From: Dimorphilus gyrociliatus
Lineage: Eukaryota; Animalia; Annelida
NCBI GenBank assembly: GCA_904063045.1
Contig: CAJFCJ010000002.1
Coordinates: 3,095,891 to 3,159,890, forward strand
Direction of reading: 5' to 3'
DNA: 64,000 nt
Below are positions 2,105 through 61,471 of this stretch, in pieces. The notes under the pieces were generated by a model. The model was not told the origin of the DNA and ran no database searches. It saw nothing but the letters and a program-made list of their open reading frames with translations. Position 1 is the first letter of the stretch; every line of letters begins with the position of its first letter. The position numbers and the translations under genes were made by a program.

Positions 2105-3081
2105 AGCCGACTTGAACCGATTAATTTTAAAAGCAAATAAGCTATTGGTTCAAAGCGACAATTATGCAAATCTAATAGGATTATGAATAATTATGTTTTA
2201 AAGATGTTTAATTGAATGAGTAACTGGGAAAATTGATGTAATATCGATAAAAAACAACTTTGTGACACCTTTTTTGTATTATTTGTAATGGCCGTTTATC
2301 TTAGCGTGAAACCTTAATTGTTTTTCAGACCATGTTTAGTAAAAAGTAAATTTATTATATAATCACGCAGCAAGTACTAGAAACGCGAACAAATAAAATC
2401 TGCTAAAGGCTACTTTTGGATGAGTCTTATATTGATTCCATCAACTTGCAATTATCCGATTATCAATAGATCTGATCAATACTTTTATCGGTCATAAACG
2501 CCGAGTAAAATCCGAATAGAAGACAATTACATTACCCCATTAAAGTCCCAATCCAATAAAATTTTTAATACCTATTGTTGTATATTACAAAGAGATGAAA
2601 TTCAATTAGAGATATACAGAATAAGTTCAAATAGAAAAGTTAGAAAAAGAATTCACTTAAAATTAAGAAAGTATTTAATCATTTCCCTTATGTAAATAAA
2701 TCTTCAATCACTTAACACGTTGTTCTTCTGCATTATTTAAAATATAACTAGATTACTCCTACTGTTCAATTCCAAACTAGAGTTATTTAAATATAAATCA
2801 AAATTCTCACATCTCTAATAAGGGTAGCCTTCTACAAAACCAAAAAAGAGACAAACTTCAATGTTAAACTCCTCTTCACCGCATATTCTTAAATAAAGAA
2901 AATCTGTCACTGGATGATACTGTGATTTCACAAACATAAAAGCCTAAATTGAACAATTGTTTCTCTTTCTACTAACAATTTATTAACATCGTATAACAAT
3001 AAAAAAATACAAGAAAGCATTCAGTAAATGTATATTTTTACAAAGGATGAACAGCTTTTCAAAATTAGCGAATCCCTTTCA

Positions 3082-3461
3082 TCATGTCTCTGATCTTTCA
3101 ATTCCACTATTTACGACATTAAGAGCGATCGGAATTTCTGCAGCAGTCTTGCACAAAGTCATTGAAGCTCTAAAACGTTCTTCATCTTTTTTTTTTATTT
3201 TCAAAGAAATATTCTTTTGAAAAGAGCTATCAAATTTTATAACTTCATAACGCATAGCTTCACCGGTCACACCGTATAAAGTTCTTATTGAATTCCTTAA
3301 AACTAATTCAAATTCGGCTTTAGCCATTTGTATAGGTTCATCCGTGTCAAATTTCCTGTAATATCAGTCAATAAAGTAATACTCTAAAATAAATGCGCAT
3401 TTTATACTAACACATTAACTTCCAATATCACCATATTATCGCTAGGAATTTCTTTAGACAT
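3082..3461 (-). CDS. RPP14: RNase P/MRP subunit RPP14/POP8-like, 2 exons (3461-3412, 3355-3082), 107 aa
   Basis: Spliced protein: MSKEIPSDNMVILEVNVKFDTDEPIQMAKAEFELVLRNSIRTLYGVTGEAMRYEVIKFDSS..ISLKIKKKDEERFRASMTLC. The 56-nt intron has GTTAGT..ACAG and is phase-consistent. The pattern resembles RPP14 (KVCLEF..FKQLLISAVKDLFGEVDAALPLDIL..ILRI..LWSSLTL), recalled from family knowledge. Confidence 0.6.
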
Positions 3462-55586: not shown

Positions 55587-58100
55587 ATGGCAAAGAAAAC
55601 GTACGATTTATTGTTCAAATTGCTGCTAATTGGAGATTCAGGAGTAGGAAAAACTTGCTTACTTTTTCGATTTTCCGATGACGCTTTTAATACTACTTTC
55701 ATTTCGACGATAGGTGAATTTTATAAGATTTTGTATATTTAACCATGAAGTGATTAATACAATAAAAACTTCCACGCTGTCATGTATTTCTTATAATGTA
55801 AATGTTGTTTGGTAAAAATTTTTGTTGGAAAGTATAGTTAATAAGTTGAATGACAGGCATCGATTTCAAGATAAAAACGATCGAACTGCGAGGAAAGAAG
55901 ATAAAATTACAAATTTGGGACACAGCGGGACAGGAACGATTTCACACCATCACAACTTCCTATTACAGAGGAGCAATGGGAATTATGCTAGTGTATGATA
56001 TTTCTAGTGCTAAATCCTTTGAAAATATCTCGAAATGGCTCAGGAATATTGACGAAGTAAGCATATAAAAATTTTCCATTACTAAAATGAACGAAAACAG
56101 GATCTAGTAAAAAACTGATATCACCTGAGTTTTTTGCCTATATATCAGGATTTCACTAGTTTACAAAGTTGGCCTAAATGATAAAATAGTGTACATTAAA
56201 AACTAAGTTTTGATATTCGCCCTACTCAGGCTAATAGAGGTTCATGAATCAATCACGTTTGCGGACAAACGTGCCTTGAGGCATATGATGAATTTGCATT
56301 TTGTATATGGATATCTATATACAATATAAATATGTAGGTATTTTTTTTATAAATGTACTTGGTGGTAAAGATAACTTTTAATAGCTAGATAATTTCACTG
56401 ATAGTTTGTTATAAATTTTAATGCTAATTTTATTAATCAGCAACAAAAACAATATATTTTAGTTTTTAGAACACATAACACACTTGGAAAAAACTGTCAA
56501 ACCTTGTTAAATTGATATGGTATTCTAATTTACATCAAAAATACTTCCTAATAAGTCTTGAAGCAAAAAAAATTATAGAATTTTATGACAGTCAATTAAC
56601 TATCTATAGATCGGTAGGAACAAGGAAATAATATGACGTATGTTTTTTGAGAAATAAGAACTAGTGTTGATAAGTGAGTGGCGTTATTCTCCTGAGCAAA
56701 CGCATTATTTAGAAGCGTTGCAGCAGTCACGTTAGTAAGTGACTGAGTGATTTTAGGACGGTTTTAAATGGCTCAAAAAGCCTTGTTCATTGAAAACTCG
56801 TAAGAAAGTTCAGTTTGAAGTAGAATAACAAAGGAATAAATTTCCTATAGACATTTGTATAATTTTGTATCAGTAATAGTTTTATTGCTTTATTTGAATA
56901 TCTACTTTTTTCTGCATTGGACATCAGTTGTCCAATGCATGGTTATTTTTTTGTTAGAATTAATAAACGGTCCCAAAATACAAATAGGACAGACGTTAAT
57001 AATTTGATAGGACTAACTAAATGACTTAGAAAAATAACCACTTTATACAGGCCATTTAGGATTCACCTAACCATATAATAATATCATTTACTCGTTAGAA
57101 TGAGCAAATTTAATCTGCAATGAATGTTTACATAATAGGCTTTGACTAAGATTGTCCAGTGATGATAAATCTTAAAATGAGAGACGGGGCTCTATATATT
57201 GCGACTAGTGTTCACTTCATATCATTTCATTATTTCATGCATCATTTCCAAGCACTAGTTGTGAATTATGGCGGCTTGTGGTTTCTGTGAGTTTGAGATT
57301 ATGAGATCTGAGGACGATTTGCTTTACTAATAAAAAATAATGTTTATATATATCAAAATATATAGCTAAGTAAAGAAAATACTAGGCCAAACCAATTAAG
57401 ACACATAATTGGGAACTGAGTAGAATTCTACGTTACCTATCTGTAATATCTAGTTATTAGAATGCCTCAAAAATGTACTTTAGCTGAAACTGAACTTCTA
57501 TTCTAAGGTAATGAGTTGTGTCTTTCAGCTATACATTTTTGTTGGTTTAATCTAAAGAGATACGTTTTTGAGGCTTTATTCTATTTCCCACAATGTTTCT
57601 CAATTTGGCTGCGTAGTAAAAATAGCACTGGGCGAATAAATTGGTCACATTTTTATACAATGCTTCTATATATGATTTTCTTATTTAACAGCACGCGAAC
57701 GAGGATGTAGAAAAAATGATCTTGGGTAATAAATGCGATTTGGTTGAAAAAAGACAGGTTCCTAAAGATAAAGGCGAAATGGTACGTGTTTCTTTTCTAT
57801 GTTTTGAAGACGGAAAAAATATTTTCCTTTCTATAGATTGCAGAGGAGCATAACATTCCCTTCTTAGAAACAAGTGCCAAAAGTAATGAAAATGTAGAAA
57901 AAGCTTTTTACCAGTTAGCCGAAGCTATATTGGATAAGGTGAGCTATTTAACTTTAATCTGAAATTTAATTTATCATTAATTAATTGACTGATTGATATT
58001 CTCCTTTTTTCTACAGACGCCGAATAAAGAATCAGACAATAGAGGCCCTGTTGATATTCGTAATTCATCGGACTCCCGGCAATCTAAATGCTGTTCATGA
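55587..58100 (+). CDS. RAB10: Rab10 small GTPase; 5 exons (55587-55713, 55857-56056, 57692-57781, 57837-57938, 58017-58100), 200 aa
   Basis: [101 protein letters not shown]. Confidence 0.97.
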
Positions 58101-60122
58101 TTTTTAGTCAAGCTTAACCTGCTTTTAGTATACAAAACTCTGAGAAATTTGATTTTCATCTTTCGATTCGGACACGCTATAAAAACGATTTTAATCGTTG
58201 GCATTTAATGATGTCTATCGTCAATCGATTTTCGTTCTATTTTATTTCGCAATCTGCATATTGAGTATATTTTAACAAAGCCTATACAATAGACATGATG
58301 TAAGTATAATTATGAAACGCTTTTGTTTAAAAGCGATAAAAAAGTCGAAACAGATTTTTAATTGCGAGGAATTACGCTTACTTGTACAACTTTGTATAGT
58401 ATTATTATGTTGAATATTATAATGACAAAATAAATTTTTTATTGTACAAAGCTTTTCAACAGGTTTTAAACCATACTTACTAATAAAAAGTATATTCTCG
58501 TTGTTTCGGAAAGAGTAATTGAAGACCTAATACGCCCACAAGACAATTAGTTGACTTTATCATCCTATATCGCTTGTTTCTTTGTTCACTTAATATTTTA
58601 ATGGGAGATGTAAAAAATAAGCAAAATGTAGCTCTCTAAATTTTTCCTCAGCCTGTAACAAGAGCGGATGTGAAATTAATGCTCTCTTGGCCTATTACAC
58701 TGAGACTTAGCAATTTCATCTTGAAATGAGTTTTAGTGGAGACACGTTGACATTAATTAATCTTTAGTACAAGTTAGTGCAAGAACTAAATAAAAATCTG
58801 GTATTTTATTAAACCTGCAATAGAAACACTGTACAATTTGTATCTTCTATTAGGAGAAAAATATTGCAAGTATTACTTTTCCATTGAAAATAACACAGTT
58901 AAGTCGTATTCTTCTAGATATTGTCTATTTCTAAAGGAAAATTTCCACGAGTAATTGGCAAGTTTGCGGGTAAAAATTGGATACTTACGCCTGACGTTGA
59001 TTTTACTTATATTCCTGTTGTATAAAATATTAAGAACAGTTCATACAATTAATTATTATTTTCAAAAAAAACCAGATTAATAAGAAAAGTACTAGAGTTA
59101 TAAATTGTTTTCGAGCTAGGAATAACAATTTCGGAAATAAAGCTTAATTGTAATTCGGTCTATACAAATATAATTCTTTCAATCCACACTGACCGAGGTG
59201 AATGTCATCTCCTTTCCATCTATCCTATACTAGATAATAAATCTTTTTCCACAAAAAAAGAGAAATACCAAATGAAGCATAACACGGTTTAATTGAAAAT
59301 ATTACTCTTTATTTTAGTAATAGAGTAATAAAAAGAGAGATTAAGATATATAAATAATATTTCTTATTTCTTTTTAATGTTTGCTAGTTACGCAGTTAAT
59401 TTAATGAGGAATTGTTACTGAGAGAGAGAAAGAGAGAAAAGAGATGGAAAAAAACATATAGTAAAAGAAAGTAAACAGATTTTTTTGAAAACGACAAAAG
59501 AATATAATTTTATTTCATTAGGAATAAGGTTTTACCGTAATAGCCTTCTTTCTATTCTCTTTCTGTCCTTTCTCTCCCACTCTCCGTTAACGAATAATTT
59601 GCATATGTATAGTTTTGTTTATAAAATATATACTGTTACAATATTTAATACGTGTTTTATTTCTATTGAATAGAAGTTTATCATATGCGCCTTTTCGATA
59701 ATTAAAAGATTGTTTTCTAAGCGAAAAGCTGAAGGAGAAAAGAGAATGAAAAAGGAAAAGGTGTGATTAGAATGAAATTAATTAAATGAATAGCATTAAG
59801 TAGATATCGCTTGTCTTTTCTATCAATATTCATTATGGTGATTCTCCAGGCACAGAATAAAAATCTCTAACGTTGTTGTTCCGCTAGTGTTAATTATTGA
59901 CAATTTTTTTATTACAGGCAGAAGATGGCAGTACTGAGGTTTGAAAGGCTTCTCTGGTGACTGAAAGTTTGATACTGTAAATGTACGAAATGTATTGAGC
60001 AAGAGAAATGTATAAATATTTATTTACTTGATAATTTTTAATGGAATAGTTAGGAAGAAACTTGAATTCTTTCAAGAGAGACTAATTTTATTCATTAAGA
60101 CAAAAGGTCAACTTGATTTAAA

Positions 60123-61471
60123 ATGTCTTTGGGACGAACATATGATGTTCTCCTAAAAATTGTTTTAGTAGGAGATACTGGCGTTGGAAAGACGGCTCTT
60201 ATGTTATTCTTCGATCATGGACTATCAGCGTCAACAATTATACCTACAATAGGTAAATTAATAATTTACATATTGCTATATTCCACTTAGTAACTTTAAT
60301 AAAATCATACATTAGAGTATATTGAACCAGTTTTCGCTTAAAATATATTTTCCCCATTAACTAAAGGAAGGAAGCAAGAATCTTTTTAAATGACGCCTTC
60401 TAGATTATGAATGTTCTTTATTTCCTATTACAAAATAAAAAAAAGCCCTACAAATGTGAAATATTTTGCCCTATTAATTTCGTAATAGTCGATTTTTTTT
60501 ATTTAGCTTCCGTGTTTCGTCATAGCTTAGCACTTTTTAAAATTACCCTCATTTTAATAATTAATAATGTTTACTTTATTTTTCTTTTAAAAAACAAAAA
60601 ACCGAACAGGAATTGATTTTAAAGTAAAAACTATAAGCGTTATGGGTAAAAGAATCAAACTACAAATATGGGATACTGCAGGCCAAGAGAGATTTCAGGC
60701 AATACCTTCATCCTATTATAGAGGTGTTCATGGAATTTTACTAGTTTATAGTATCACTAAGGCATCATCCTTTGAAAATGTCTCAAAATGGTTAAATCGT
60801 ATTAAAAAGGTAGGTTAATTAAGATGAATAATAATAATAATAACAATCATAAAAGAAGACAAACTTTATTCTGTATTAAATGAATATTCCAATTATAAAT
60901 TAATATTTACTTGGTTTCGTATATAAAAGAGAAATTTAACGTTTATATTCTGAAACCTCAAGATATAACGTCGTAGAATTTTCCTTGTATATTAAATTTA
61001 CTACTTATGATTATCCTTTTTACTTTGTTCCTTTAAAAGCAAACGGGCTCTGATGATCCCGAAATGATTCTCTTAGGCAACAATTGCGATCTGGAAAATG
61101 AAAGGCAAATATCGAAGAAGAACGGCGAAGAGGTTTAGTCTCTAAGAATTTTTGGCCATAGGCTAAATATAATTAAATAGATTATGATTTTTTCCCTTAA
61201 ATTATAGATGGCCAGAAACTTAAATATCTCCTTTATGGAAACTAGTGCCAAGACAGGCATAAATATTAATAAAGCTTTTTATAGTATAACGGAATTAGTT
61301 TTAAATAGGGTGAGATGGCTACATTATCTTTCACACAGTATTTTTCCTTTCATTAAATCATAATTCTAATAACAATTTTAGAGAACAAGAGAAGAGAAAG
61401 CCGAATTCGAGGATATGGAGAAAACGTATAAAAAGAAAGGATTACTTGATTGTTTTGGATGTCGTTCTTAG
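60123..61471 (+). CDS. Divergent Rab8/10-family GTPase, tandem duplicate of RAB10; 5 exons (60123-60252, 60610-60809, 61040-61132, 61208-61309, 61382-61471), 204 aa
   Basis: [91 protein letters not shown]. Same four intron positions and phases as the neighbouring RAB10; frame intact. Confidence 0.9.

What the first reader, a model, noticed from the sequence alone, without database searches (positions are those of the whole stretch)
60123..61471. RAB10 tandem duplicate with predicted fast-cycling nucleotide pocket and non-canonical lipid tail
It lies 2 kb downstream of RAB10 with identical intron positions, so it is a local DNA duplication. P-loop (GDTGVGKT), switch I Thr, DTAGQ and ETSAK are kept. 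Two guanine-contacting residues are changed: G4 NKCD->NNCD (equivalent to Ras K117N, a known exchange-accelerating change) and the base-capping Phe (Ras F28 position, DDAF->HGLS). The effector surface is remodelled (FISTIG->IIPTIG, HTITT->QAIPS). The C-terminus [13 protein letters not shown] is not CC, CXC, CCX or CaaX. Inference: a GEF-independent or nucleotide-poor Rab with new effectors and possibly palmitoyl/polybasic targeting instead of GDI recycling.
Basis: partly seen in the sequence, partly recalled or inferred. Interest (0 to 1): 0.7.

Follow-up and report, generated by a model that had tools for sequence, protein, structure and literature searches.

The report
Divergent RAB10 tandem copy in annelid
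The small marine worm Dimorphilus gyrociliatus keeps, right behind its normal RAB10 gene, an old and very fast-evolving copy in which both residues that clamp the guanine base are replaced, so it is probably a weak-binding, fast-exchanging Rab switch. Its expression and biochemistry are still unproven.

Summary
At 60123-61471 (+) there is an intact five-exon, 204-aa Rab gene, identical to the public record DgyrCDS1647 of Dimorphilus gyrociliatus. It starts 2,022 bp after the RAB10 stop codon.

- **Origin:** it shares all four RAB10 intron positions and phases. The worm's RAB8 shares only one of them.
- **Changes:** Ras-F28 and Ras-K117 equivalents are Ser and Asn, against Phe and Lys in 159 of 159 RAB10/RAB8 sequences. 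The LRRK2-site Thr is Ala. The tail is CFGCRS.
- **Age and selection:** the duplication is old. Synonymous sites are saturated, yet codon-position identity is 0.62/0.81/0.35, and neutral drift to this divergence almost never keeps the reading frame. So it was under purifying selection, on a branch roughly 15 times longer than RAB10's.
- **Relatives:** no orthologue turned up in three very large searches. Protein trees cannot place it; the RAB10 origin rests on gene structure and adjacency.
- **Expression:** not shown. There is one unspliced low-depth contig, and no signal where RAB10 is deep.

Fast cycling is a reasonable inference from Ras and Rho mutants. Palmitoylation replacing prenylation is unsupported. 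This is a lineage-restricted Rab variant of moderate interest.

The parts
60123..60252 (+). Exon 1 of the divergent copy (DgyrCDS1647). It runs from Met1 to the first base of the Gly44 codon and holds the P-loop GDTGVGKT (60171-60194), HGLS and IIPTIG.
   Evidence: The donor is GT at 60253. The intron has the same position and phase 1 as RAB10 intron 1.
60225..60227 (+). Codon TCA, Ser35. It sits at the position of the guanine-capping Phe (Ras F28, human RAB10 F34).
   Evidence: The column reads Phe in 159 of 159 RAB10/RAB8 sequences.
60610..60809 (+). Exon 2 (200 nt, the same length as RAB10 exon 2). It holds [17 protein letters not shown] (60672-60686), [15 protein letters not shown] and LVYSIT. 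Ala74 (60699-60701) replaces the conserved switch II Thr, which is human RAB10 T73.
   Evidence: It is 70% identical to RAB10 exon 2.
61040..61132 (+). Exon 3. It holds G4 as NNCD (61079-61090). Asn125 (61082-61084) stands where Lys is expected (Ras K117, human RAB10 K123).
   Evidence: The column reads Lys in 159 of 159 RAB10/RAB8 sequences.
61208..61309 (+). Exon 4 (102 nt, the same length as RAB10 exon 4), with G5 ETSAK (61238-61252).
61310..61381 (+). Intron 4 (72 nt, with an in-frame stop). It is retained in the only RNA-library contig that lies on this gene.
   Evidence: run X1, record 4, 61213-61408, no mismatches, depth 2.9.
61382..61471 (+). Exon 5: a charged segment, then KKK, then LLDCFGCRS and the stop codon. 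Cys199 is at 61451-61453 and Cys202 at 61460-61462.
   Evidence: AlphaFold2 extends the last helix to residue 193.
55587..58100 (+). Canonical RAB10, the parent-type gene. It has 5 exons and 200 aa and ends KCCS. Its 3' UTR reaches about 58480-58650.
   Evidence: spliced contigs in X1 to X4. It is 83-86% identical to Lingula and human RAB10.

Best explanation
This is a real protein-coding gene. It is an old tandem copy of RAB10 that the Dimorphilus lineage kept under purifying selection while it diverged very fast.

The copy keeps what a GTPase needs to bind phosphate and magnesium and to hydrolyse GTP:
- P-loop Lys/Thr
- switch I Thr
- DTAGQ with the catalytic Gln
- the Asn and Asp of G4
- SAK

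It has lost both side chains that sandwich the guanine base, Phe to Ser and Lys to Asn.

Inferred mechanism: nucleotide affinity is lowered and spontaneous GDP/GTP exchange is raised. The protein would then load GTP without a GEF and still switch off by hydrolysis.

Switch I, switch II and the regulatory switch II Thr are rewritten. Partners and kinase control should therefore differ from RAB10's.

Membrane attachment is most likely still through the C-terminal cysteines, helped by the KKK patch.

Shown here: the gene model, the RAB10-type structure, the substitutions, their uniqueness, the past selection and the lack of orthologues. Inferred, not shown: exchange kinetics, lipidation, partners and expression.
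For: - **Gene and model:**
- **RAB10-type origin:**
  - All 4 introns are shared with RAB10, whose introns are confirmed by RNA.
  - The worm's RAB8 shares only intron 1, has two introns of its own, and lacks RAB10 introns 2 and 3.
  - The copy begins 2,022 bp downstream on the same strand.
  - The best named matches are RAB10, in PDB (204 bits against 196 for Rab8A) and in 5.8 billion protein clusters.
  - At 9 columns that tell RAB10 from RAB8, it matches RAB10 four times and RAB8 never.
- **Selection:**
  - Codon-position identity to RAB10 is 0.62/0.81/0.35, against about 0.28 expected at random.
  - Identity at four-fold degenerate sites is 9 of 28. dN is 0.37 and dS is saturated.
  - In simulated neutral drift, 0.05% of copies keep the frame at 63% amino-acid identity, and 0 of 20,000 at 41%.
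  - It keeps 65 of 90 columns that are invariant across RAB10 and RAB8.
  - Pfam Ras scores 197 bits over the whole domain.
- **Pocket:**
  - The Phe and Lys columns are invariant in 159 other sequences.
  - K117N and K117R are described as fast-cycling (PMC10205766).
  - F28L is fast-cycling through lost contact with the guanine ring, and the naturally fast-cycling RHOU and RHOV carry Tyr at that position (PMC9029563).
  - AlphaFold2 gives pLDDT 66-72 for P-loop/helix 1 and 67-70 for switch II. A RAB10 control run with the same alignment gives 92-95 and 81-89.
Against: - **Expression is unproven.** In four RNA-type runs RAB10 is spliced and covered, up to depth about 900 in X4. The copy has only one 196-nt unspliced contig at depth 2.9.
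- No Logan-derived copy of the exact protein is on record.
- GC3 is 0.28, close to non-coding composition.
- Protein trees do not place it inside RAB10. Holding it with RAB10 costs 10.8 log-likelihood units (p 0.113). Holding it with RAB8 is hardly worse (p 0.077).
- The selection signal covers its whole history and cannot exclude a recent loss of function.
- No kinetics were measured. The double change could instead abolish nucleotide binding.
Confidence: 0.6

Rival explanations
1. It is a silent or dying copy. The gene was functional for a long time but is now not expressed, or only as unspliced noise, and is on its way to becoming a pseudogene. On this reading the odd pocket residues reflect relaxed constraint.
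For: - There is no spliced RNA evidence.
- The only contig retains intron 4, which carries an in-frame stop.
- Run X4 has RAB10 at depth about 900 and nothing on the copy.
- GC3 has drifted to 0.28.
- It changes 25 of 90 universally invariant columns.
- AlphaFold2 confidence is low in the nucleotide-binding half.
Against: - The 204-codon frame, the ATG and all eight splice dinucleotides are intact in a region of about 27% GC, where stop codons arise easily.
- Neutral drift to this divergence keeps a frame in fewer than 5 of 10,000 trials.
- Second codon positions are 81% conserved against 35% for third positions.
- The core catalytic motifs are kept.
- The runs laid were contigs from unknown tissues, and two of them from metatranscriptomes, so absence there is weak evidence.
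Confidence: 0.17
2. It is a nucleotide-free or nucleotide-poor pseudo-GTPase. Losing both guanine clamps lowers affinity so far that the protein is mostly empty. It would then act as a scaffold or as a trap for a RAB10-type exchange factor, not as a cycling switch.
For: - Both base contacts are lost together.
- Helix 1 and the P-loop are modelled poorly, with helix 1 drawn as a strand at pLDDT about 66-72, unlike the RAB10 control.
- From general knowledge, nucleotide-free small GTPase mutants bind their exchange factors tightly.
Against: - The P-loop Lys/Thr, the Mg-binding Thr, DTAGQ, the Asn and Asp of G4 and SAK are all conserved. That is hard to explain if nucleotide binding no longer mattered.
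- Single changes at each position in Ras and Rho give fast cycling, not empty proteins.
- The switch regions that an exchange factor would grip are themselves rewritten.
Confidence: 0.13
3. It is not a RAB10 derivative. On this reading it belongs to an older, separate Rab8/10-group subfamily that merely lies next to RAB10.
For: - The maximum-likelihood trees put it outside the RAB8+RAB10 group, with support 97/97 and 90/88.
- It pairs weakly (80/65) with other divergent proteins, P0461, P0480 and P0103.
- A sister relation to the worm's RAB10 has AU p 0.022.
Against: - Its branch is 3.7-4.2 substitutions per site, and the program flags those joins as long branches meeting.
- It is only 43-46% identical to that group, less than to RAB10 at 47-53%.
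- At least one member of that group comes from sponge-associated metagenomes.
- No orthologue exists at above 56% identity anywhere.
- Four of four introns are shared with RAB10, against one of four for RAB8.
- A clade with RAB10 is not rejected (p 0.113).
Confidence: 0.1

Closest known systems
RAB10 (canonical, including the gene 2 kb upstream)
   Same: - Same five-exon structure and intron phases
- Rab fold
- IGIDF, KLQIW and the FENxSKWL signature
- Lys in IDFKxKT and Ser in SSYYRG
- C-terminal cysteines
   Different: - Only 50-53% identical, whereas RAB10 orthologues are 83-87% identical to one another
- Phe34 to Ser, Lys123 to Asn, Thr73 to Ala
- Switch I reads IIPTIG
- The tail is CFGCRS, not CC(X)
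- The branch is about 15 times longer
Fast-cycling mutants Ras K117N/K117R and Ras, Rac1 and Cdc42 F28L
   Same: The same two structural positions are hit, the two faces of the guanine clamp. The literature ascribes faster spontaneous exchange to each change (PMC10205766, PMC9029563, PMC6678527).
   Different: - Those are disease or laboratory single mutants in Ras and Rho proteins. Here both changes occur together, naturally, in a Rab.
- The Phe replacement here is Ser, not Leu.
- Nothing was measured here.
Naturally fast-cycling atypical Rho GTPases (RHOU, RHOV, RHOD, RHOF)
   Same: The hydrolysis residues are intact while the surroundings of position 28 are altered (RHOU and RHOV carry Tyr). 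This gives activation without an exchange factor (PMC9029563).
   Different: They belong to a different family (Rho). They are conserved across vertebrates and known to be expressed, and their G4 Lys is kept.
Other lineage-restricted, fast-evolving RAB10-like paralogues
   Same: - A third RAB10-structured gene lies in this genome on contig C17 (locus L004). Its exon lengths are 127/200/90/102, and it has degenerate TIACDL, DTTGQ, YYPG and ETSAL motifs.
- Locus L035, from an unknown organism, carries two divergent RAB10-like genes in tandem. One has Ser at the same Phe position and SKID in G4.
   Different: These are only 33-52% identical to this gene. They are not its orthologues, and each has a different set of degenerate motifs.

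Membership tests
Rab family of small GTPases | Ras-type G domain with motifs G1 to G5 | tested here: met
   Pfam Ras PF00071 scores 197 bits over profile positions 1-160 of 162. G1, G2, G3 and G5 are canonical. G4 reads NNCD in place of NKxD. The fold search returns Rab8, Rab10 and Rab1 structures at E about 1e-16.
Rab family of small GTPases | Rab-specific RabF motifs (IGVDF, KLQIW, RFrsiT, YYRGA, LVYDIT; the list is from general knowledge) | tested here: inconclusive
   IGIDF and KLQIW are kept. RFQAIP, YYRGV and LVYSIT are each altered at positions that are invariant in RAB10 and RAB8.
Rab family of small GTPases | C-terminal cysteine motif accepted by RabGGTase (CC, CXC, CCX, CCXX, CCXXX, CXXX; PMC9141697) | tested here: not met
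   The tail is CFGCRS, that is CXXCXX. The cysteines lie 3 and 6 residues from the end. Whether the tail is prenylated cannot be tested here.
RAB10 orthologue | Groups with RAB10 in a tree and shows orthologue-level identity | tested here: not met
   It is 47-53% identical to RAB10s, which are 83-87% identical among themselves. It lies outside the RAB8+RAB10 clade in the trees. A clade with RAB10 is not rejected (AU p 0.113).
RAB10-derived paralogue (origin by gene duplication) | Shared derived gene structure and genomic adjacency | tested here: met
   It shares 4 of 4 intron positions and phases with RAB10, against 1 of 4 for the worm's RAB8. It lies 2,022 bp downstream on the same strand. 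At RAB10-versus-RAB8 diagnostic columns it scores 4:0 for RAB10.
Fast-cycling (exchange-factor-independent) GTPase | Raised intrinsic nucleotide dissociation with hydrolysis retained | not testable with these tools
   Only the sequence basis is present: Ser at the F28 position, Asn at the K117 position, and the catalytic Gln kept.
LRRK2-type Rab substrate | Thr or Ser in switch II at the position of human RAB10 T73 | tested here: not met
   The residue is Ala74, codon 60699-60701. The column is invariant Thr in RAB10 and RAB8.

The most novel reading that the evidence does not exclude
A naturally evolved Rab that has given up both guanine-clamping side chains while keeping its hydrolysis machinery. 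[quoted passage not shown] Together with a second degenerate RAB10-like gene on contig C17, it would mark a small lineage-specific radiation of rule-breaking RAB10 switches.
Probability: 0.3. Interest if true: 0.55.

Novelty: new variant of a known kind. Interest (0 to 1): 0.33.

Why it matters
Rab switches are normally held in check by tight nucleotide binding, so that exchange factors decide where and when they turn on. Suppose a Rab kept by selection has lost both guanine clamps and still works. It would then be a natural experiment on how far the pocket can be loosened, and a ready-made fast-cycling scaffold for Rab biochemistry. It would also show how a tandem copy of a highly conserved trafficking gene can escape its parent's regulators.

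If the gene turns out to be unexpressed, it is simply a slowly dying paralogue. It would then serve as a caution against reading function from motifs alone.

Tried and rejected
- **Exon 2 against 1.84 billion cluster representatives.** Nothing exceeded 72% identity. The best full-length matches were RAB10-like proteins at 51-54% identity.
- **Exon 2 in the word search.** Its length window admits only fragments. None was closer than 71% identity.
- **NCBIfam scan, exon by exon.** It returned only a generic small-GTPase hit.
- **Exact look-up of P0358 in assemblies.** Nothing is on record.
- **Scan of JGI metagenome contigs.** All 581 confirmed matches were at most 54% identical, no closer than ordinary Rabs. 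The gene-specific peptides brought in no closer relative.
- **Trees with rough paralogue models.** Intron read-through spoiled them, so they were discarded. Cleaner trees still left the gene unresolved, and the AU tests do not discriminate RAB10 from RAB8.
- **The P0461/P0480/P0103 group as possible orthologues.** This was rejected on identity (43-46%) and on source.
- **L035 gene 1, which has Ser at the same Phe position.** It is only 33.5% identical, so it is not an orthologue.
- **Supplements of the genome paper.** There is no Rab entry. Gene ids there (DgyrG...) cannot be mapped to DgyrCDS1647.
- **My first splice model of the worm's RAB8.** It had a wrong acceptor offset. The intron positions were therefore read directly from the sequence.

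Full report
**How the spliced model was handled**

The joined protein was never typed into a search, fold or look-up tool, so that step was left out. The joined sequence was built only inside scripts, from window.fa, for local comparisons.

A public record was then reached with an alignment of a public RAB10 plus the exon translations, each given by reference (alignment A2, searched). This was P0358, 'DgyrCDS1647 [Dimorphilus gyrociliatus]', 204 aa. It is letter-for-letter identical to my model. From then on it was used by its id.

**The observation**

The window is AT-rich eukaryotic DNA. It comes from contig C2 of a 77.9-Mb assembly, which is the annelid Dimorphilus gyrociliatus (genome paper PMC7854359).

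The gene has five exons: 60123-60252, 60610-60809, 61040-61132, 61208-61309 and 61382-61471. All are bounded by GT..AG, and the frame is 204 codons.

The RAB10 gene upstream has exons 55587-55713, 55857-56056, 57692-57781, 57837-57938 and 58017-58100, and ends KCCS. Its four introns are seen spliced out in contigs of four RNA-type runs.

The two genes have introns at the same alignment columns and in the same phases. Exon lengths are 130/200/93/102/90 against 127/200/90/102/84. The copy's ATG lies 2,022 bp after the RAB10 stop codon.

**Is it a RAB10 derivative?**

By similarity alone the case is weak.

- The copy is 50% identical to its neighbour and 53% to human RAB10. It is 48% identical to RAB8.
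- Among solved structures it scores 204 bits to Rab10, 196 to Rab8A and about 172 to Rab1.

Maximum-likelihood trees give it a terminal branch of 3.7-4.2 substitutions per site, against 0.23-0.32 for the worm's RAB10. They leave it at the base of the RAB8+RAB10 group, with warnings that long branches meet.

| Constraint tested (AU test) | p |
|---|---|
| Copy + all RAB10 | 0.113 |
| Copy + RAB8 | 0.077 |
| Copy + the worm's own RAB10 only | 0.022 |

So protein phylogeny cannot decide.

Gene structure can. The worm's canonical RAB8 lies on C2 near 443.4-444.3 kb (locus L038). It shares only intron 1 with RAB10. It has its own introns inside the Trp62 codon and after Met82, and it lacks RAB10 introns 2 and 3. 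The copy shares all four RAB10 introns.

At the nine columns where 140 RAB10 and 18 RAB8 sequences are fixed for different residues, the copy matches RAB10 four times, RAB8 never, and neither five times.

Together with the tandem position, this makes a RAB10 origin the best-supported reading, at about 85%.

**Age and selection**

Against RAB10, identity by codon position is 0.62, 0.81 and 0.35. The random expectation is about 0.28. Shared four-fold degenerate sites are identical in 9 of 28 cases. dN is 0.37 and dS is too saturated to compute.

The duplication is therefore old, and the protein was constrained for most of the time since.

In a substitution-only neutral simulation starting from RAB10:

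| Neutral substitutions per site | Mean amino-acid identity | Copies keeping the ATG and an open frame |
|---|---|---|
| 0.2 | 63% | 0.05% |
| 0.4 | 41% | 0 of 20,000 |

The real gene stands at about 50% identity, with eight intact splice dinucleotides as well.

It keeps 65 of the 90 columns that are at least 97% invariant in both RAB10 and RAB8. Many of the 25 changes are conservative.

**No orthologue found**

- Exon 2 against 1.84 billion cluster representatives: nothing above 72% identity.
- The full protein against 5.8 billion clusters: itself at 448 bits. Apart from a few fused multi-domain gene predictions (222-303 bits), the best matches are RAB10s of many phyla at 50-56% identity (about 205-211 bits), then RAB8s.
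- JGI metagenome contigs: nothing above 54% identity.

As far as public data go, the gene is lineage-restricted.

**What changed**

The two columns of the guanine clamp read Phe and Lys in 159 of 159 other RAB10/RAB8 sequences. Here they read Ser35 and Asn125.

Other non-conservative changes fall at universally invariant columns (human RAB10 numbering):

- Arg28 to Phe
- Ser30 to Asp
- Asp32 to Gly
- Phe38 to Ile
- Ser40 to Pro
- Thr73 to Ala
- Thr75 to Pro
- Asp90 to Ser
- Glu109 to Lys
- Val115 to Pro

Thr73 is the conserved switch II Thr, known from my own knowledge as the LRRK2 site.

These changes cluster in helix 1, switch I and switch II.

AlphaFold2 gave the copy a mean pLDDT of 78. 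The P-loop and helix 1 reach only 66-72, and helix 1 is drawn as a strand. Switch II reaches 67-70. A control, Lingula RAB10 folded with the same 63-sequence alignment, gave 92-95 and 81-89 for the same parts, with a normal helix 1.

The C-terminal half is confident in both models. In the copy the last helix is extended to residue 193. That leaves about ten free residues before the cysteines.

The fold search returns Rab8, Rab10 and Rab1 structures.

**Mechanism**

The literature calls Ras K117N and K117R fast-cycling, because contact with the nucleotide is weakened (PMC10205766). It calls Rac1 F28L fast-cycling because contact with the guanine ring is reduced. The natural fast cyclers RHOU and RHOV carry Tyr at that position (PMC9029563).

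The copy still has the P-loop, the Mg-binding Thr, the catalytic Gln, the Asn and Asp of G4, and SAK. The most likely behaviour is therefore weak nucleotide binding with fast spontaneous exchange and retained hydrolysis. This is an inference.

An emptier pseudo-GTPase is the main alternative for how the protein behaves.

**Lipid tail**

However, the enzyme receives its substrate from REP and does not read a strict motif itself. Cys202 sits 3 residues from the end, within the span of the CCX to CCXXX motifs. A polybasic patch beside the cysteines also occurs in the worm's Rab35, whose tail is RKKKRDCC.

Nothing here points to palmitoylation replacing prenylation.

**Expression**

This is the weak point. 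In the four runs laid, which are all contigs, RAB10 is spliced and covered. Depths are 5-20 in X1 to X3 and about 340-1,400 in X4.

The copy has one 196-nt contig in X1 (61213-61408, depth 2.9). It runs straight through intron 4, which holds an in-frame stop. The rest is low-complexity or conserved-motif noise.

The other listed runs hold word shares of 0.05-0.10, which RAB10 mRNA alone would account for.

The public annotation pipeline combined ab initio prediction, protein alignments and transcript evidence (PMC7854359). The matching model therefore does not prove a transcript. That paper also excludes operons and trans-splicing, so read-through from RAB10 is not expected.

GC3 of the copy is 0.28, against 0.38 for RAB10. 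That fits low expression.

**Verdict**

This is a real, old, selectively maintained but extremely divergent RAB10 tandem paralogue. Its pocket is uniquely loosened and its switch surfaces are rewritten.

The fast-cycling idea is reasonable but untested. The lipid-tail inference is overstated. Expression remains to be shown.

Noticed in passing
L004 (G000 contig C17, about 118.9-120.6 kb); exons at L004 447-573, 1496-1695, 1812-1901, 1970-2071: A third RAB10-structured gene in the same genome. Its first four exons have exactly RAB10's lengths (127/200/90/102) and intron positions. Its motifs are degenerate: TIACDL for TIGIDF, DTTGQ, YYPG, and ETSAL for ETSAK. NKAD and the capping Phe are kept. 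Its branch is even longer than this gene's, at about 8 substitutions per site. The last exon was not found.
   Followed up: partly
L035 (Logan contig of SRR25758460, organism unknown), genes at 350-1039 and 2476-3138: Two divergent RAB10-like genes lie in tandem without introns. The first has Ser at the same guanine-capping Phe position (DGVS) and SKID in G4. It is only 33.5% identical to the worm gene, so this looks like a parallel change and not an orthologue.
   Followed up: partly
window 56626-56810 (RAB10 intron 2): Run X4 has a contig at depth 14.6 inside RAB10 intron 2, against several hundred to about 1,400 for the RAB10 exons in that run. It could be a minor alternative exon or an intronic transcript. 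The 'poison exon' region noted by another reader (57201-57292) had no coverage in any of the four runs.
   Followed up: no
window 57938-58046 (start of RAB10 exon 5): In run X4 the RAB10 contig replaces the first 29 bases of exon 5 with 29 other letters and differs at many 3' UTR positions. That run comes from a diverged strain or sister species whose RAB10 tail differs. The same run shows nothing on the divergent copy at 95% or more likeness.
   Followed up: no
window 59411-59446 and 59548-59580: In the spacer between the two genes, a purine-rich (GA-type) low-complexity run is followed about 100 bases later by its pyrimidine-rich near-complement. This is an imperfect inverted repeat, possibly a remnant of a mobile element or a hairpin.
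   Followed up: no
L023 (C3 about 2.778 Mb) and L027 (C2 about 2.786 Mb): These are two separate Rab3-like genes with near-identical N-terminal halves. The own-genome scan reports a TGA inside the L027 match, which may simply be an intron.
   Followed up: no
window 61382-61450 (residues 176-198 of the copy): AlphaFold2 predicts that the usually disordered hypervariable region forms a continuation of the last helix up to residue 193 (pLDDT 68-88). Only about ten residues are left as a flexible linker to the cysteines. In the RAB10 control this region is disordered.
   Followed up: partly
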